Source: Octopus bimaculoides (lineage: Eukaryota). From it: a stretch of 60,412 nucleotides of DNA. The position numbers and the translations under genes were made by a program. Position 1 is the stretch's first letter. Each line of letters starts with the position of its first letter. The DNA lies in NCBI RefSeq assembly GCF_001194135.2, contig NC_069000.1, forward strand, positions 47,190,460-47,250,871. Reading direction: 5' to 3'. The notes below the pieces were generated by a model, which was not told the DNA's origin, did not search any database, and was given only the letters and a program-made list of their open reading frames with translations. Positions 697-59,038 of this stretch are shown one piece after another.

Positions 697-20912
<20,216 letters not shown>

Positions 20913-24203: not shown

Positions 24204-26775
24204 ATGGTGATCTCTATTGGATTTGAAGGAAGTGCCAACAAACTTGGTATTGGTATTATGAAAAATGACAAAGTTTTAAGCAACCCTCGCCACACCTACG
24301 TCACACCTCCTGGTCAAGGTAAGAATTGCACCATTCCATCATGGTCACCCAACCTTATTCACTATTCCTGCCCTCCTCTTGTATCTATTACCTCACTTCA
24401 AGCCTTCAAGGGAGCTTGCATGGTCACTGGACATTTTAGAAATAGCAGCTAAATTCCTTCAAATCATACCCTGTGATATTTAAACAAAAAGGACATTGTA
24501 GATAATGTGTTCAGGGTTTCCCTACGAATGGTCATGGCTGGACTTCCTTTGATCACAGGCTTGCTCAATCAGGGTTGTTCTGGGACTAAACAATGACATC
24601 TATATATGTCTCTTAGTGTTTTTCTTGGTCTTCTCACCAAATCTTTTGCAAGATACATGGATCGTTATTTTAAAGCTAATTGCTGTGGTTGATGGAACGA
24701 ACTCCCATATATTTCTTGTCCACCCATGAAGGGAGTGGGTGAAAGAGAAACTCAACTCTGATAAGATTTGAACTTATGATATCAAGACTCAATACCTGCC
24801 AGATCTGTGTTGATTGAGATTTTGTTTTTTACCTGAAAAATAAGGAATTTGGGGCCATTCTACCAAAATGAAGCACAAATGTATTTTAGGCAGTGCTCCA
24901 GCTTGGGCATAAGCCATGGTAGCTTTAATGAACTAAAATATAAAACATAACCATTCCACTGAAGCCGTCTTTACCTTTCATCCTTTCAGGGTTGATAAAA
25001 TAAGTACCAGTTGCATACTGGGGCCAATGTCTTCAACCTCCCCCCTGCCCCCAAATTGCTGGCCTTGTGCCAAAATTTGAAACCATTATTATTATTTTTA
25101 ATTAACAGAAGTTACAAAGAAACTCAAAGGTTGAGAGTTCCATGCATGGCATGAAAATGATACAAAACTTGTCATGAATTTTAACTGCAAAATGTCCTGA
25201 CATGTTTAACCCTTCATCTCGTTTGGCCTTGGTAGATGCAGGTAACATTTGTAACAATGTTAGTTCTATAATGTTTCTCTGTAGGTTTTTTGCCACGCGA
25301 CACTGCCAAGCATCACCAGGAATATATACTGAAGGTTCTTAACCAAGCGATAGAAGAAGCACAGATTCAAACAAAAGACATTGATGTAATTTGTTATACA
25401 AAAGGTAGGTACATCTGTGTGTATGTGTGTGTGTGTGTAATATCCTTCCTCTAAGTAATTCAGCAAACATATTGTTTCCATGGTAACACATATGAATTTT
25501 GGATTTTGTTTTCCCTTGTATTTTCAGGTCCTGGAATGGGTGGACCTTTGGTGTCCACAGCAATTGTGGCACGCACAGTGGCACAGCTTTGGAAGAAACC
25601 TGTTGTGGCAGTTAATCATTGTATTGCTCATATCCTTCTGTTTGGGGTCTGAAAAGGGACTTTGGCTTCGTGTGTGAGTGGGGAGGATGTCACATGTAGG
25701 TAATATGTGTAGGTGTGGGAGGTGACTTATGGATGTGTATGTGTGATAAGATGTGTGTCTGTGTGTGGGTCATATGTTCACATGTGAAGATCACTTGTAT
25801 GTGTCTGTGAGGGTTATATGTGTATCTAGGAGTACACGTATGTGCTTATGTATGAGTAATGTGTGTGTATGCATGTGTCACGCATCGTGTGTGTGTGCAC
25901 ATACCAAAAAGTGGTGATGGTTGATGTTGTTGTTTTGCCCCAGTTCAAATCTAATCCTACAAACATTATCCTGCCATGACCATCTCATCTATTATTCAGA
26001 TACAACATATCTAGGCCTGCATTAGAAAATATGATCAACTTTTTATACTTTTTAAGGCAGCAGTAAATGATTTGAGGGAGATTTGGTTGATATTTTTAGC
26101 AAGTCAAATTACCATATAAGTGATTTGTTGTTCCTTTGGTGGTGATGGTGGTGGTTGTGGGTTAGGGTGAGGGTGGTTGTGATGGTGATGCTGATTGTAG
26201 TGATAATGATAGTGATGATGATGATGATGATGTATGTTGGTTCCTATTTTCTGTTCCTTTATTGTTGTTTTTGTTCCTTAATTCCTCTTTTTTGCACATA
26301 TTGAAATGGGTCGCCTGGTGACCGGGGCACAGAATCCCACTGTCCTCTATGTCAGTGGAGGAAACACACAGGTAAGACATCCTCTCTCTCTCCCTCTCTC
26401 TTTTTTATCTATGCTTCCCCCTTTCTCTCCCTCTTCATCTCCATTTCTCAACACAACCCTGTCTGTCTGTTTGTCCTGCAGGTCATCTCTTATTCCCAGC
26501 AGAAATATCGTATCTTTGGGGAAACCATTGACATTGCAGTCGGAAACTGCCTGGACAGATTTGCCAGAGTTTTAAAGGTAATTCCACTTTCACTGCTTTT
26601 TTTTCTTTATTTTACTTGGGTTAAATATCCCTTAGACGTTTTTTATAACCTCTAATTGAACTCACCTCTCTCTCTCTCTCTAAATATATATATATAGATA
26701 TAGATATAGATATGTTGCCACCTTGTATTATAGCTGTTCCTGTACATTTACCCTTACCTGTTATAATTATCCCAT

Positions 26776-26817
<42 letters not shown>

Positions 26818-29800
26818 CCACCTTATATATCACAGTTATCTTCATTATATTTATCCTCCTCCCTGTATTACAGTTATCCAATGATCCCAGTCCTGGCTAC
26901 AACATTGAACAACTGGCCAAAAAGTAAGTATAGATTTATATTGTGACAGATTGGACTGGAACAGACTGGATATAAATGGATGTTAAATGGATGAACTGGT
27001 AATGTTTGTATGATTATTTTCTTTGCAGAGGTAAGAAACTGGCCGAACTCCCTTACACTGTGAAAGGCATGGATGTGTCATTCTCTGGTTTACTCTCATA
27101 CATTGAGGTGAGTCTGTAGCTTTTTGCTTCATTCTTTACCTCCCACCCCCACCCTCACGCCAAACTTTGTGCCTTTCTGTGTTTTAAACTAAACTTCTGT
27201 CATGTTTCAAGCAGTTGATGCCATGGTTACAGTAAACTTCATTTTCTTTTTTTTTCTATTTATATTTTTGTATGGTTTGATTATTAAAGGAAGGGCAGGA
27301 GTAGTGACCTTGTGACCTTTCTTGGGGCTTCCTGACTGGATTTGGGGAATGGGCCTGTTGTTATGTCCATTATTTAGCCTGCATCCTGTCTGTTGTTACA
27401 TCTCCCCTATAATGGTCCCCTGTGACATATTTCAGGAGAAAGCCCCTCAATGGTTGAAGAATGGTGACTACACACCGGAAGATCTCTGTTTCTCTCTTCA
27501 GGAGACAGTCTTTGCTATGTTGGTGGAGATTACTGGTAAGTGTGTATAGTTGAATCTCTCATCCCCTGGTGTATGACTGGTTGACAGGGATGGTAACAGC
27601 TGAGTGTATAATGGTTTGGGTGATTCATGCTGAGATTTTACTTTAGGCATGGATGCATGGTCAAAAGGTTTGTTTCCCAAGTTCATAGTTTTGAGTTCAA
27701 TTCCACTGCATGGCACCATGGGAAAGTGTCTTTTACTACAACCCCAGGTTAATTGAGGCTTTGCGAATAGATTTGGTGGACGGGAAGTGAAAGATACCTT
27801 TTGTGTGTGAGTGTGACTCCTTGTTAGATGCTGGTGGTAAATCGAGTGTCACTGTTTTACAAATGGTATCATTCATTCCTAGTCTTCTGTGAAAATATTG
27901 GGGTCCCATTTAAGGGCCTTCACATTCATTCAGCTTCCTCAATGCTGGACCAAAAAAGGGAGTTACTAAGATGTTACTCAGGGCTGCTATTTCTAGCAGC
28001 CATATCTTCAAGCTTTAGTTTTACTTTCTTAAAAATAGCTGATTGTTTCCCTACACAATGAAGAAGTGTATTCTCCCCCCAACACACTTCCAATTTTATT
28101 GAAGCCAGAGGCCACATGTTTGAAATGGTAAATCCCAGGATATCAAACTGTAAACTAAAGTTGGTGTAGCCATGGGGGGAAACTCTGGTTCTCTGTTTTA
28201 CATTAACCAACCACCTCTGTTAACAACAACTATTTATAGTAATCTGGTTTCTAAAGGGTTAACATTTAAATCATGTTGTCTTAGTTATCCTAGTTGTCCC
28301 CAATTTTGTTAATTCTTATTTTTATTTTTAATTTGTATTTTGTTTCTTCAAATATTTTGGGTTTTTATGTCCCACAGAACGTGCCATGGCCCACTGCAAT
28401 TCCAACGAAGTCCTTATTGTTGGTGGTGTTGGCTGTAAGTATCCTTTTTTGCTACACTTTCTCATGGAATGTCTTCTTATCTTCCAATTCTGCTCTTAAC
28501 TATTTTGCAGGCTCAGCAAGCTTGGTCTTAGATTTCGGTGCAGGTAGGGGTGGTGTTGTTAAGTTTGCTGACCAACCAGGTGGTTCCATGTTTAGTCTCA
28601 CTGTATGGTTCATTGGGAAAATGTCTTCTACTGTGGCCCCTGGTCAATCACAGCAGTGAGTGTGGATTTGGGAGACAAAAACTGAAAGACTGTCGTGTGT
28701 GTGTTTCCTTGACTTGGCATCACATGATGGTTGTAAATGAGTGTCACCATCATGCCAGCAGCAGCATTCCATGCAAAACATATCTGGCCACGACAAAATA
28801 TGACCTTGCTTGGAAACGTGAGGTTTAGCAACAGGAAAGGCATCTGGTTGTAGAAAGTCTGTCTCAATGAATTCCAACTGACCTGAACAAACATGGAAAA
28901 GTGGATGTTAAAGCAATGGTGATGATGATGATGATGATGTATGCATAGGTTTGTTTCCCCTCTTTGTTTTGACATTGTTTAAAGTAAAAATTTCTTCCAC
29001 TCTTTAGTTATTCCATTGTGTGAAAGGAAAGACCAATGGATTAAGCGATGGGTTGATGGCAGGAAGGACACCTGGTATCATCAAGTTTCATCTAACCCAT
29101 GCTAACTTGAAGAAAACAGATGTAAAAACGTTTGGGTGGCAGTACTGGTGACGTCAGGGATGGCCGACTGATGATTCTTTTGTAGTCTGTATTTCAATGT
29201 TACCAAAAATATCTTTGTGCCTTTTATTTTTTCCCTTTTTCTTTTCTTAAAAATCTTTGTCAGGCAATGAACATTTACAAAAAATGATGGGTCAAATGGC
29301 TGAAGAGAGAGGGGCCAAATTATTTGCAACAGACGAGCGGTAAGTCCCCCATTGATCACCCCCCACCAATTACTGACCTGTCGTTCTCACTTTTATAACA
29401 TCTCAAACATGGGAAGGGATTTAAACTGAGATACAGATGTGACTGGGTGCTTTAGAAGTTCACTTCCCAACCACATGGTTCCAGGTTCAGTCCCACTGTG
29501 TGGCACCTTGAGCAAGTGGCTTCTACTATAGCCTCAGGCCAACCAAAACCTTGTGTTTGTGTGTGTGTGTGTGTGCATATATGTGTATGTATGCATATAA
29601 ATTATATATATATATATATAAATGTATGTGTATTTTTTCAATGAGTACAAATAACACGGAAAAAATAAAGTTACCAGGGTAGCAAAAATTCACTTAAGTG
29701 CCAAGAATATTACAGCCTAATATTCTTGAACGCCAGAAAACCAAAAGCATGAGTTTAAGAAGCAAACATCTTAATCACACAGCCACACTTGTCTCTCATC

Positions 29801-30550
29801 CATTTGTATGAAAGCAAATGAGAGACCCAGCGATTACAAGAACATTTCACATTTTGGTCCATTCTGCTCAACAGAAACCATTACAAAATTGGTCATTCCT
29901 TGTACACCCTTCACTCTTCAGATTTCTAAATATTAATCCCAGAATTCCAATTCTTCTTCAGGTTCTGTATTGACAATGGTGCCATGATAGCTTATGCTGG
30001 TTTATTGATGTACAAGAATGGTTACACCACCCCACTAAAAGACACAGGATGCACCCAGAGGTATTATTATTGTTGTTACTACTACTACTACTACTACTAC
30101 TTAAGGTAGCAAACTGGCAGAATCATTAGCATGCTGGATAAAATGTTTTGCAGCATTTCTTCCTTCTTTATGTTCTGAGTTCAAATTCCACCAAAGTTGA
30201 CCTTACCATTCGTTCTTGATGAAATGATTACCACTAAAATAATGAGGTTGAGGTAACCTACTAAATTTCCTTCCCACCAAGATTGCAGGCCTTGTTCCTA
30301 CAGTAGAAAGGAGTATTATTACGTTTTTTATTTTGCTGTGTCTTGTGAGGGTCGTAATGCCAATATTAATAACACACACTGGTTCAATATCACTTCTTCA
30401 TTGTTTGTCAGTTGGTTAAATATACAACCAACTAACTAATCAATCATTTGTTTAATGAATTGGTTAATCAATCATTTGGTTGTTTATCCATTCTTGTATT
30501 GTCTTTGCAGATATCGAACAGATGAAGTTCTTGTCACTTGGAGGAATTAA
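24204..30550 (+). CDS. OSGEP: tRNA N6-adenosine threonylcarbamoyltransferase (Kae1/OSGEP, KEOPS catalytic subunit; 12 coding exons, 335 aa)
   Basis: Exons 24204-24318, 25285-25404, 25528-25629, 26298-26371, 26482-26577, 26874-26923, 27029-27107, 27436-27535, 28378-28434, 29264-29339, 29962-30060, 30511-30550 total 1008 nt. Motifs: [93 protein letters not shown]. Intron 3 is AT-AC. Confidence 0.97.
25630..26297 (+). other. U12-type (minor spliceosome) AT-AC intron, OSGEP intron 3
   Basis: 5' site ATATCCTT at 25630, branch site TTCCTTAAT at 26274-26282, 3' end TGCAC at 26297. Removal restores C|AT (His) in NHCIAHIEMG. No GT-AG solution exists at this junction. Confidence 0.93.
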
Positions 30551-37156: not shown

Positions 37157-46825
<9,669 letters not shown>

Positions 46826-49586: not shown

Positions 49587-51360
49587 NNNNNNNNNNNNNN
49601 NNNNNNNNNNNNNNNNNNNNNNNNNNNNNNNNNNNNNNNNNNNNNNNNNNNNNNNNNNNNNNNNNNNNNNNNNNNNNNNNNNNNNNNNNNNNNNNNNNNN
49701 NNNNNNNNNNNNNNNNNNNNNNNNNNNNNNNNNNNNNNNNNNNNNNNNNNNNNNNNNNNNNNNNNNNNNNNNNNNNNNNNNNNNNNNNNNNNNNNNNNNN
49801 NNNNNNNNNNNNNNNNNNNNNNNNNNNNNNNNNNNNNNNNNNNNNNNNNNNNNNNNNNNNNNNNNNNNNNNNNNNNNNNNNNNNNNNNNNNNNNNNNNNN
49901 NNNNNNNNNNNNNNNNNNNNNNNNNNNNNNNNNNNNNNNNNNNNNNNNNNNNNNNNNNNNNNNNNNNNNNNNNNNNNNNNNNNNNNNNNNNNNNNNNNNT
50001 ATATATATATATATATATGTGTAAGGGACGACCGTGCGAACTCATAAAAGGAGAAATGGTGACGAATGGAAAAACAGAGGACTCCTTTTATTTAAACGTG
50101 TCACACGGTCGAACACACAATAATAATATATCGAAGATGATATACAATGATATGTTATGCGACGATAACATAGATGACCAGTAATGAAAAACTACAACCG
50201 TATAAGATGAATAACAGAGATATTTATTGTAGCGTTAAAGATGTATGTCTGTGTGAGAGTGTGAATGCGACATATAAGAGCATAATCAAAGACAGGCCGT
50301 CATACAAAGAAAAGTGTGTATGTGAGTGATACATGTGTGTATGAGTGTTTACAGCAGATAGAAAGAGAGTCAATAACACGTGAGCAATTATACCAGTTCG
50401 TTAGTACACTATAGGAAAAGTTCTGTATGTGAAAGTGAGGAAAGGCTGAGTGTGGCAGTGCTGATCACTAGTTGTGATGTCGTNNNNNNNNNNNNNNNNN
50501 NNNNNNNNNNNNNNNNNNNNNNNNNNNNNNNNNNNNNNNNNNNNNNNNNNNNNNNNNNNNNNNNNNNNNNNNNNNNNNNNNNNNNNNNNNNNNNNNNNNN
50601 NNNNNNNNNNNNNNNNNNNNNNNNNNNNNNNNNNNNNNNNNNNNNNNNNNNNNNNNNNNNNNNNNNNNNNNNNNNNNNNNNNNNNNNNNNNNNNNNNNNN
50701 NNNNNNNNNNNNNNNNNNNNNNNNNNNNNNNNNNNNNNNNNNNNNNNNNNNNNNNNNNNNNNNNNNNNNNNNNNNNNNNNNNNNNNNNNNNNNNNNNNNN
50801 NNNNNNNNNNNNNNNNNNNNNNNNNNNNNNNNNNNNNNNNNNNNNNNNNNNNNNNNNNNNNNNNNNNNNNNNNNNNNNNNNNNNNNNNNNNNNNNNNNNN
50901 NNNNNNNNNNNNNNNNNNNNNNNNNNNNNNNNNNNNAGAGAAACTGGACCGAGACAAATTATTGGGTATGAGTTAAAGCTATTTATAACAAACTATGGGC
51001 TCCCGATGGCTTCAGAATTTTACTCTATCACATGACCTTATTAGGGGCCGTGATTGGTCAGTTTGCGTTCTGGCGGGAAAGGTTCGAAGAAGTTGCCGAT
51101 TCGAATAATAATCAGTCACGTGATGACAAGGAATGGGTTCTCTACTACGCTCGCATTTATTTATATTTAAATGAGAAGATTGTATGTAATGGCGATAGTA
51201 GTTTTGTATCTAGTGACGATAGGTAGTTTCACTACATATATATATATATATATGGAAATATTATTCATTATACATGCACATACGTATACATTGATACACA
51301 AACGCTCGAGTGTGTGGTGTACACGCACAGAAACATATGTCCACATAGGCACATGATATA

Positions 51361-57400: not shown

Positions 57401-59038
57401 TCGGTTGAAGAAGAAACCAGATCTTTTGAAAGAGACCCGTGAGAGCTGGAAGCAGCCGTCGACCGGAATAAAATGAAATTCACGACAATTCGCAAGAATA
57501 ATTCTAATAAAATGCTTCTATAATGTATACAAGGAATATCTAGACGAAAGATCGAGAAGGAAATGGGATCACAGTTTAAAACAGCCTTAAAACAACAGAA
57601 GAACAGTTCGAATCTCAGACTTTCTGACATATCTTCTTATATTTAAGGGGTTTTGGGTTTTTCTTATATATTTCAACGATTCAGGAGACACAGCCTCTTC
57701 ACTTGCCAATACAAAGACCTCCTCACAAATGACTTTAGAATCTCCAACCGTGAACCACCCTGCGAGGGTAGTGCTGTAGGGCTTACCTTGATCAGCGCAA
57801 CAAGACGTTTCAAGTTCATAGAAATACCTTGTTTTGATTATTCTTTGGTTTATTTATTTCTGTCTAACTTTTGAGGTAAATATTTCTTGTTCTTTTTTTC
57901 ATTCGTCTTATTATATTTTCCATAACGCCTTTCTCCATTTTCCCCCTCCCCTTCACATTGGAGACATTCTCTCTCCGCTCCCGCCACCGCCACCAACGTT
58001 TACCATATTTTACCATATTCTNNNNNNNNNNNNNNNNNNNNNNNNNNNNNNNNNNNNNNNNNNNNNNNNNNNNNNNNNNNNNNNNNNNNNNNNNNNNNNN
58101 NNNNNNNNNNNNNNNNNNNNNNNNNNNNNNNNNNNNNNNNNNNNNNNNNNNNNNNNNNNNNNNNNNNNNNNNNNNNNNNNNNNNNNNNNNNNNNNNNNNN
58201 NNNNNNNNNNNNNNNNNNNNNNNNNNNNNNNNNNNNNNNNNNNNNNNNNNNNNNNNNNNNNNNNNNNNNNNNNNNNNNNNNNNNNNNNNNNNNNNNNNNN
58301 NNNNNNNNNNNNNNNNNNNNNNNNNNNNNNNNNNNNNNNNNNNNNNNNNNNNNNNNNNNNNNNNNNNNNNNNNNNNNNNNNNNNNNNNNNNNNNNNNNNN
58401 NNNNNNNNNNNNNNNNNNNNNNNNNNNNNNNNNNNNNNNNNNNNNNNNNNNNNNNNNNNNNNNNNNNNNNNNNNNNNNNNNNNNNNNNNNNNNNNNNNNN
58501 NNNNNNNNNNNNNNNNNNNNNNNNNNNNNNNNNNNNNNNNNNNNNNNNNNNNNNNNNNNNNNNNNNNNNNNNNNNNNNNNNNNNNNNNNNNNNNNNNNNN
58601 NNNNNNNNNNNNNNNNNNNNNNNNNNNNNNNNNNNNNNNNNNNNNNNNNNNNNNNNNNNNNNNNNNNNNNNNNNNNNNNGGGGGGGGGGAATAAGGGGAG
58701 TGGAGAGACAAGAAAGAAAGAAAGAAAGAAAGAAAGAATCACAATTATTTCCTCTCTACATACATACAAATAGACAGACAGACAAAGGGAGAAAGAGAGA
58801 GGGAGAGACTTACCAGTTCTTCGTGTCCGATGCCTAAGTGACGGCCATCCTTACTTTGCCATCATCATCATCATCATCATCATCATTATAGGGCTGTGAT
58901 GTTGGGTGGTAGTGAGAGAGTTCAGAGAGCCGTCCACCTGGTCATCAATTGGTGTGTGGACAGATGTGACAATGAAGTAAAAGTACCCCCAGGATACAAC
59001 TGGTAGCAATTCTCCACTAGTTTATATAGTACAGTACA

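What the first reader, a model, noticed from the sequence alone, without database searches (positions are those of the whole stretch)
25630..26297. U12-type AT-AC intron splits the metal-binding His codon of OSGEP
Seen: a 668-nt intron with ATATCCTT 5' site, TTCCTTAAT branch site 16 nt from the end and an AC terminus. It interrupts the second His of the HCIxH motif (C|AT). Established: AT-AC introns are rare, need the minor spliceosome, can be rate-limiting, and are often mis-annotated by GT-AG predictors. From memory, human OSGEP has 11 exons with one 176-nt exon equal to exons 3+4 here (102+74), which would make this intron absent in human; this needs checking. Inference: t6A synthesis here depends on minor splicing.
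Basis: partly seen in the sequence, partly recalled or inferred. Interest (0 to 1): 0.7.

Follow-up and report, generated by a model that had tools for sequence, protein, structure and literature searches.

The report
Ancient minor-spliceosome intron in octopus OSGEP
The octopus gene for the tRNA-modifying enzyme OSGEP contains a genuine rare-class (U12-type, AT-AC) intron inside a catalytic histidine codon; it is an old animal intron that chordates lost and is already in the public gene model, so it is real but ordinary.

Summary
Window 25630-26297 is a 668-nt intron of OSGEP/Kae1 in Octopus bimaculoides. It starts ATATCCTT and ends AC. Its branch site TTCCTTAAT puts the branch A 16 nt from the 3' end. 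It splits codon His113 (C|AT), the second histidine of HCIAH.

A scoring matrix built from 84 published human minor introns gives about 12 bits for the 5' site and 13-14 bits for the branch site. The other ten OSGEP introns score at most -3.7 and 5.0.

The same codon and phase carries a U12-type intron in six other animals. It is AT-AC in Argonauta and Lingula, and GT-AG subtype in Pomacea, a sea urchin and a hemichordate. Trichoplax has a degenerate version.

It is absent in a sea anemone, amphioxus, a sawfish and a bat.

The spliced protein equals RefSeq XP_014773139.1 exactly, so the junction is already annotated. Other annotations (O. vulgaris, Sepia pharaonis) break exactly here.

The link to t6A synthesis is sound inference, but rate limitation is untested. 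Verdict: a real, ancient, ordinary member of a known class, of low novelty.

The parts
24204..30550 (+). OSGEP/Kae1 coding region: 12 coding exons, 11 introns, 335 aa
   Evidence: Exon map and translation with no internal stop. The protein is identical to RefSeq O. bimaculoides XP_014773139.1. Pfam TsaD E=4e-85.
25528..25629 (+). Exon 3 (102 nt). Encodes ...NHCIA and the first base (C) of the His113 codon. The His109 codon is at 25617-25619.
25630..26297 (+). Intron 3: a 668-nt U12-type AT-AC intron in phase 1
   Evidence: It is the only non-GT-AG intron of the gene.
25630..25638 (+). U12-type 5' splice site ATATCCTTC
   Evidence: Perfect match to /ATATCCTT. It scores 11.8-12.5 bits on a PWM from 84 human minor introns (training median 13.7-14.4). 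The other 10 introns score -3.7 or below.
26272..26283 (+). U12-type branch-site 12-mer TGTTCCTTAATT (core TTCCTTAAT at 26274-26282). The presumed branch A is 26281, 16 nt from the intron end.
   Evidence: It scores 13.2-14.2 bits, the 74th percentile of the human training set. The other introns score 5.0 or below.
26296..26297 (+). 3' terminal AC dinucleotide
26298..26371 (+). Exon 4 (74 nt). Starts with AT, completing His113, then [24 protein letters not shown].
26137..26232 (+). (GGT/GAT)n microsatellite-like tract in the 3' part of the intron. It has no known role in splicing.
   Evidence: A similar tract lies in the same part of the Argonauta intron.

Best explanation
Window 25630-26297 is a genuine U12-dependent (minor-spliceosome) intron of the AT-AC subtype in the single OSGEP/Kae1 gene of Octopus bimaculoides.

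Inferred mechanism, from the known behaviour of this intron class:
- U11 snRNP pairs with ATATCCTT at the 5' end.
- U12 snRNA pairs with TTCCTTAAT and bulges the branch A at 26281.
- U4atac/U6atac.U5 then catalyse removal, joining C (25629) to AT (26298). This rebuilds the His113 codon of the metal-binding HCIAH motif.

The intron is ancient. It was present as U12-type at this codon and phase at least in the last common ancestor of protostomes and deuterostomes, and perhaps before placozoans split off. It has switched between the AT-AC and GT-AG subtypes. It was deleted precisely in chordates and in a sea anemone.

Retention puts a stop codon 7 codons into the intron. Productive OSGEP mRNA, and hence cytosolic t6A37 synthesis by KEOPS, therefore requires minor splicing in octopus and in most invertebrate bilaterians examined.
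For: Shown here:
1. Exact motifs and coordinates.
2. Only this junction keeps the conserved protein uninterrupted, and the product equals the RefSeq protein exactly.
3. On a PWM from 84 human minor introns (Olthof 2019 supplementary file 3), the 5' site scores about 12 bits and the branch site 13-14 bits at d=16. All ten other introns of the gene score negative at the 5' site.
4. The joint chance at a homology-fixed junction is about 2e-7.
5. Orthologous introns at aa113 phase 1:
   - Argonauta: ATATCCTT/TGCCTTAAT...AC
   - Lingula: ATATCCTT/TTTCTTAAC...AC
   - Pomacea: GTATCCTT...AG
   - Lytechinus: GTATCCTT/TTCCTTGAT...AG
   - Glandiceps: GTATCCTT/GACCTTGAC...AG
   - Trichoplax: GTATCTAT/TCTTTAAC...AG
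6. Two unlabelled metagenome OSGEP loci carry GTATCCTT at the same codon.
7. There is no intron at this site in Actinia, amphioxus, sawfish or bat.
8. Phase 1 fits the known bias of minor introns away from phase 0. Molluscs and Lingula are reported as relatively rich in minor introns, and Octopus sinensis was surveyed (PMC10639083).
9. Retention reads [11 protein letters not shown]-stop.
10. The two metal-bound histidines are essential for t6A activity (bioRxiv 10.64898/2026.03.03.709218).
Against: - No RNA-seq reads of O. bimaculoides were examined. Use of junction 25629/26298 rests on the RefSeq model, on protein conservation, and on short transcript-like contigs from decapodiform cephalopods that encode the contiguous motif.
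- Dependence on U11/U12/U4atac/U6atac is inferred from sequence, not tested.
- The octopus minor snRNA genes are not in this window (Rfam scan empty).
- The 5' site score is only at the 24th percentile of the human training set, because of A at +1 and C at +9. It is still about 15 bits or more above every other intron of the gene.
- Nothing here tests whether this step is rate-limiting.
Confidence: 0.95

Rival explanations
1. It is a U2-type (major-spliceosome) AT-AC intron, a rare class that shares the terminal dinucleotides but is recognised by U1 and U2.
For: Only the AT...AC termini. A pyrimidine-rich stretch (CCTCTTTTTT) lies between the branch site and the 3' end.
Against: The 5' site is a perfect ATATCCTT. 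The branch site is a perfect TTCCTTRAY at 16 nt from the end. Both score in the range of human minor introns. Orthologues keep [A/G]TATCCTT while the terminal dinucleotides switch, which is the signature of U12-type introns.
Confidence: 0.02
2. The real mRNA avoids the AT-AC junction by using cryptic GT-AG sites. The O. vulgaris model CAI9737268.1 does this and drops residues 74-124. On this reading the AT-AC intron is an artefact of homology-forced annotation.
For: Such a model exists in a public annotation. A GT in the Val codons of exon 2 and the AG at 26331-26332 would allow an in-frame skip. This is inferred from the window sequence.
Against: That product lacks both metal-binding histidines and the whole of exon 3, so it would be catalytically dead. 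Full-length 335-aa proteins with a contiguous HCIxHIEMGR are encoded on short transcript-like contigs of related cephalopods and in the RefSeq models of O. bimaculoides, O. sinensis and Argonauta. The U12 signals are conserved across phyla.
Confidence: 0.02
3. The motifs are a chance match, and the intron was gained recently in one lineage.
For: ATATCCTT alone occurs 7 times in the window. One copy lies inside intron 2, 190 nt upstream.
Against: The joint chance is about 2e-7. The same codon and phase carries U12-type signals in molluscs, a brachiopod, an echinoderm and a hemichordate.
Confidence: 0.01

Closest known systems
U12-type (minor-spliceosome) introns, AT-AC subtype, as catalogued in human (for example SPCS2, MATN2, E2F5, WDR11 in Olthof et al. 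2019, PMC6717393)
   Same: It has the /ATATCCTT 5' site, a TTCCTTRAY branch site close to the 3' end and an AC terminus. It is not in phase 0. It is the single minor intron among many major introns in a housekeeping, information-processing gene. It shows deep conservation and switching between the AT-AC and GT-AG subtypes.
   Different: The host gene, OSGEP, is not a minor-intron gene in human or mouse. The intron is missing in the chordates examined, so it does not appear in vertebrate-centred lists.
Orthologous OSGEP intron of Lingula anatina and Argonauta hians (AT-AC), and of Pomacea, Lytechinus and Glandiceps (GT-AG U12 subtype)
   Same: It occupies the identical codon (second His of HCxxH) and phase 1, with the same [A/G]TATCCTT 5' site and a U12-like branch site 9-16 nt from the 3' end.
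   Different: Length ranges from 159 to 1441 nt, the terminal dinucleotides differ, and branch-site quality varies (Pomacea scores only 5.9 bits).
U2-type AT-AC introns
   Same: The terminal dinucleotides are the same.
   Different: The internal 5' site and branch-site consensus are of the U12 type here.

Membership tests
U12-type (minor-spliceosome) intron | 5' splice site consensus /[A or G]TATCCTT | tested here: met
   ATATCCTT at 25630-25637 is a perfect match. It scores 11.8-12.5 bits on a PWM from 84 human minor introns, while the other 10 introns score -3.7 or below.
U12-type (minor-spliceosome) intron | Branch-site consensus TTCCTTRAY lying close (about 10-20 nt) to the 3' splice site | tested here: met
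   TTCCTTAAT at 26274-26282, with the branch A 16 nt from the end. It scores 13.2-14.2 bits, the 74th percentile of the human set.
U12-type (minor-spliceosome) intron | Terminal dinucleotides AT-AC or GT-AG | tested here: met
   AT at 25630-25631 and AC at 26296-26297.
U12-type (minor-spliceosome) intron | The junction is used in mature mRNA | tested here: inconclusive
   The spliced product equals the RefSeq XP model exactly. Related cephalopod transcript-like contigs encode the contiguous motif. No octopus reads were examined.
U12-type (minor-spliceosome) intron | Removal depends on U11, U12, U4atac and U6atac snRNPs | not testable with these tools
   This needs snRNA knock-down or a minigene assay.
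U12-type (minor-spliceosome) intron | The organism has a minor spliceosome | not tested
   There are no snRNA genes in the window. The literature surveys Octopus sinensis for minor introns and reports molluscs as relatively rich in them (PMC10639083).
U12-type (minor-spliceosome) intron | Orthologous introns keep the U12 signals | tested here: met
   Six species from five phyla, plus two metagenome loci, have them at the same codon and phase.
U2-type AT-AC intron | A U1-complementary 5' site (ATAAGT-like) and no U12 branch-site box | tested here: not met
   The 5' site is ATATCCTTC and a perfect U12 branch-site box is present.
OSGEP/Kae1 (TsaD family, catalytic subunit of KEOPS) | A TsaD-fold ASKHA domain with the HxxxH metal-binding motif | tested here: met
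   PF00814 E=4e-85. The alignment of residues 4-335 with human OSGEP 6GWJ_K scores E=4e-173. H109 and H113 are present.

The most novel reading that the evidence does not exclude
The OSGEP minor intron is retained across most invertebrate bilaterians because it acts as a control valve. It would couple output of the essential t6A/KEOPS pathway to minor-spliceosome activity, for example to U6atac level under stress. Chordates and some cnidarians would have uncoupled the two by deleting the intron precisely.
Probability: 0.07. Interest if true: 0.45.

Novelty: new member of a known kind. Interest (0 to 1): 0.18.

Why it matters
Practical value. The intron is a clear annotation trap. GT-AG-only pipelines produced OSGEP models in Octopus vulgaris and Sepia pharaonis that lack the catalytic histidines or start just after the intron. 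Those models should be corrected.

Evolutionary value. It adds one well-documented case of three known patterns:
- an ancient minor intron kept as U12-type across protostomes and ambulacrarian deuterostomes;
- switching between the AT-AC and GT-AG subtypes;
- exact loss in chordates and in a sea anemone. In the anemone the neighbouring intron is also missing, which would fit loss through a reverse-transcribed copy.

Biological value. In these animals a universal tRNA modification enzyme needs the minor spliceosome. In vertebrates it does not, so OSGEP is missing from vertebrate-centred minor-intron gene lists. None of this changes what is known about minor introns.

Tried and rejected
- First splice mapper. 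The version built on gapped tblastn hits failed where hits ran across short introns. I replaced it with chaining of exact matches and exact junction enumeration.
- Failed look-ups. Crassostrea isoform X2 and Mizuhopecten were not on record, so no bivalve was examined.
- Literature. Searches for OSGEP or Kae1 with U12 or 'minor intron' found nothing relevant; the one apparent hit was Osgepl1 in an SMA expression table. The supplement of PMC11347168 is not held.
- Metagenome scan. Only 2 of 120 loci encode OSGEP, and both are unlabelled animal-like sequences.
- Rfam scan of the whole window found nothing, so there is no embedded snoRNA or snRNA.
- GTATCCTT at 28439 looked like a second U12 intron. 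The true donor is the overlapping GTAAGT at 28435, and using 28439 would shift the frame.
- The other ATATCCTT copies in the window were not linked to any exon.
- Not reached: human genomic DNA, and plant, fungal, protist, sponge, annelid and arthropod loci. The age of the intron before Bilateria/Placozoa is therefore open.

Full report
**1. What is in the sequence**

The window comes from an octopus. A tblastn search with a remembered human OSGEP sequence (used only as a probe) located twelve coding blocks on the + strand between 24204 and 30550.

Joining them at explicit splice sites gives a 1008-nt reading frame and a 335-aa protein with no internal stop. That protein is identical to RefSeq XP_014773139.1/XP_052830948.1 of Octopus bimaculoides and 99% identical to the O. 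sinensis protein. It matches Pfam TsaD (PF00814) at E=4e-85. It also aligns residue for residue (4-335) with human OSGEP in structure 6GWJ chain K, so human numbering applies.

Ten of the eleven introns are GT-AG. Intron 3 is the exception:
- It runs from 25630 to 26297, 668 nt.
- It begins ATATCCTTC and ends ...TGTTCCTTAATTCCTCTTTTTTGCAC.
- Exon 3 (102 nt) ends CAT TGT ATT GCT C.
- Exon 4 (74 nt) begins AT ATT GAA ATG.
- The intron therefore sits in phase 1 inside the codon of His113, the second histidine of HCIAH.

The two conserved histidines bind the active-site metal, and mutating them abolishes t6A activity (bioRxiv 10.64898/2026.03.03.709218).

**2. Is it more than chance, and is it U12-type?**

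The 8-mer ATATCCTT alone is weak evidence. It occurs seven times in the window against 3.0 +/- 1.7 expected.

I had no intronIC. Instead I built position weight matrices from the 5' site and branch-site 12-mers of 84 human minor introns, listed in supplementary file 3 of Olthof et al. 2019 (PMC6717393).

| Intron | 5' site score | Best branch-site score |
|---|---|---|
| Octopus intron 3 | 11.8-12.5 bits (varies with background) | 13.2-14.2 bits, branch A 16 nt from the 3' end |
| Human training set, median | 13.7-14.4 bits | 11.4-12.4 bits |
| The ten other OSGEP introns | -3.7 to -19.8 bits | at most 5.0 bits |

Across both strands of the window, only 9 of 120,806 positions reach the 5' site score and only 5 reach the branch-site score. 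The junction is fixed by protein homology to a 6-nt register, so the joint chance is about 2e-7.

The junction can slide by -1 to +4 nt without changing the mRNA. Only the AT-AC register corresponds to a known splice-site class.

**3. Comparative evidence**

I fetched the genomic loci of orthologous proteins and mapped each protein exactly onto its own DNA (mapping; scores).

| Species | Group | State at aa113, phase 1 |
|---|---|---|
| Octopus bimaculoides (window) | cephalopod | ATATCCTT...TTCCTTAAT...AC |
| Argonauta hians | cephalopod | ATATCCTT...TGCCTTAAT...AC |
| Lingula anatina | brachiopod | ATATCCTT...TTTCTTAAC...AC, only 159 nt |
| Pomacea canaliculata | gastropod | GTATCCTT...AG (U12 GT-AG subtype; weak branch site, 5.9 bits) |
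| Lytechinus variegatus | sea urchin | GTATCCTT...TTCCTTGAT...AG |
| Glandiceps talaboti | hemichordate | GTATCCTT...GACCTTGAC...AG |
| Trichoplax adhaerens | placozoan | GTATCTAT (weak, 3.7 bits) with a good branch site TCTTTAAC (11.1 bits, d=15); cannot be classed |
| Actinia tenebrosa | sea anemone | no intron between aa79 and aa170; this intron and the next are both missing |
| Branchiostoma floridae | amphioxus | neither of those two introns; one U2-type intron 27 nt downstream (equivalent to Gly122, phase 1) |
| Pristis pectinata | sawfish | no intron; one 176-nt exon covers aa79-138; 11 coding exons |
| Phyllostomus hastatus | bat | no intron; one 176-nt exon covers aa79-138; 11 coding exons |

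A pattern scan of metagenome contigs added two unlabelled OSGEP loci, L056 and L126. Both have GTATCCTT at the same codon.

The simplest reading has four parts:
- The intron is an ancient U12-type intron. It was present at least in the protostome-deuterostome ancestor, and possibly earlier.
- It switched between the AT-AC and GT-AG subtypes.
- It was deleted precisely in chordates and in a sea anemone.
- Subtype switching and loss are established fates of U12-type introns (Burge et al. 1998, from my own knowledge).

Phase 1 fits the known bias of minor introns away from phase 0. Molluscs and Lingula are reported as relatively rich in minor introns (PMC10639083).

**4. The human claim**

Human DNA could not be retrieved.
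- The bat protein is 96% identical to the remembered human one, and its exon covering aa79-138 is 176 nt, which equals 102+74.
- A paper states that human OSGEP has 11 exons (PMC11612026).
- OSGEP does not appear in the human and mouse minor-intron tables of Olthof et al. 2019, whereas SPCS2 and DERL2 do.

**5. How it works, and what depends on it**

Shown here:
- the sequence signals;
- the exact reading-frame restoration;
- the conservation across phyla.

Inferred from the known mechanism of this intron class:
- recognition of the 5' site by U11 and of the branch site by U12;
- catalysis by U4atac/U6atac.U5.

If the intron is retained, the reading frame continues [11 protein letters not shown]-stop. 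That gives a 119-residue fragment lacking most of the enzyme, and probably a target of nonsense-mediated decay. Productive OSGEP mRNA therefore needs minor splicing in octopus. Whether this step limits expression was not tested.

**6. Annotation consequences**

NCBI's models for O. bimaculoides, O. sinensis and Argonauta are full length. Three other models fail at exactly this intron:
- O. vulgaris CAI9737268.1 (284 aa) lacks residues 74-124, which includes both catalytic histidines.
- O. vulgaris CAI9737269.1 (220 aa) starts at Met116, the first Met after the intron.
- Sepia (Acanthosepion) pharaonis KAE1 CAE1302609.1 (212 aa) starts at residue 124.

Transcript-like contigs from decapodiform cephalopods encode the full 335 aa with a contiguous HCIGHIEMGR.

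**7. Novelty and verdict**

I found no paper that mentions a minor intron in OSGEP or Kae1. Against that:
- the junction is already in RefSeq;
- the intron is widespread in animals;
- a pan-eukaryotic intronIC survey covers Octopus sinensis and Lingula, so it is almost certainly in existing computed catalogues.

It is a correct and well-described observation of an ordinary member of a known class. Its value is mainly for annotation, and as one more example of minor-intron loss and subtype switching. Interest is low.

Noticed in passing
window 28435-28446 (+), 5' end of OSGEP intron 9: The U2-type donor GTAAGT overlaps a perfect U12-like GTATCCTT that starts 4 nt downstream, at 28439. This is the highest-scoring U12 5' site match in the window (15.6 bits). 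A weak U12-like box CTTTTCTTAAAA lies 13 nt from the 3' end. Using 28439 would add 4 nt and shift the frame. The Pomacea and Argonauta introns start GTAAGTATTCTT and GTAAGTATTGAA. It is probably chance, though a decoy site or a relic is possible.
   Followed up: partly
window 25440-25448 (+), inside OSGEP intron 2: A second ATATCCTTC 9-mer lies 190 nt upstream of the real U12 5' site and 36 nt into the 123-nt intron 2. It is not conserved: the 16.6-kb Argonauta locus has only one ATATCCTT. Pairing it with the AC at 26297 would skip exon 3.
   Followed up: partly
window 26137-26232 (+) and L001 about 4650-5150: A (GGT/GAT)n microsatellite-like tract fills the 3' part of the U12 intron, just upstream of the branch site, in both Octopus and Argonauta.
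   Followed up: partly
proteins P0058, P0223 (O. vulgaris) and P0224 (Sepia pharaonis): These public gene models of OSGEP are truncated or mis-spliced exactly at the AT-AC intron. They lack aa74-124, or start at Met116, or start at aa124.
   Followed up: yes
L010 5096-5777 (Branchiostoma floridae): Amphioxus lacks the introns at aa113 and aa138. It has a U2-type GT-AG intron at a different position, equivalent to Gly122 in phase 1, 27 nt downstream of the U12 site.
   Followed up: partly
L004 2933-3204 (Actinia tenebrosa): The sea anemone lacks two adjacent introns (aa113 and aa138) at once, leaving one long exon covering aa79-170. Losing neighbouring introns together would fit loss through a reverse-transcribed copy.
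   Followed up: no
window 37157-39136 (-): An uninterrupted 659-aa ORF carries glycoside hydrolase family 31 domains (PF01055, PF21365). It appears to be a single-exon GH31-like gene downstream of OSGEP.
   Followed up: partly
window 7026 (-), 19884 (-), 4832 (-), 3489 (+), 23873 (+), 33938 (+), 56656 (+): Further [A/G]TATCC(T/TT)-type matches score 11-14 bits as U12 5' sites. None was tied to an exon. The count of ATATCCTT (7) is at the upper edge of chance (2 of 100 shuffles reach it).
   Followed up: no
window, several places (for example about 15220-15700, 39670-39950, 50480-50940, 58020-58680): Runs of N (3343 in all) flanked by microsatellites (TA/TG/CA repeats) mark assembly gaps. Gene content there cannot be judged.
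   Followed up: no
L008 and L009 (bat, sawfish) compared with L001 (Argonauta): In both vertebrates the gene immediately upstream, on the opposite strand, has an Exo_endo_phos domain (APEX1-like). In Argonauta the upstream neighbour is a class I aminoacyl-tRNA synthetase.
   Followed up: no
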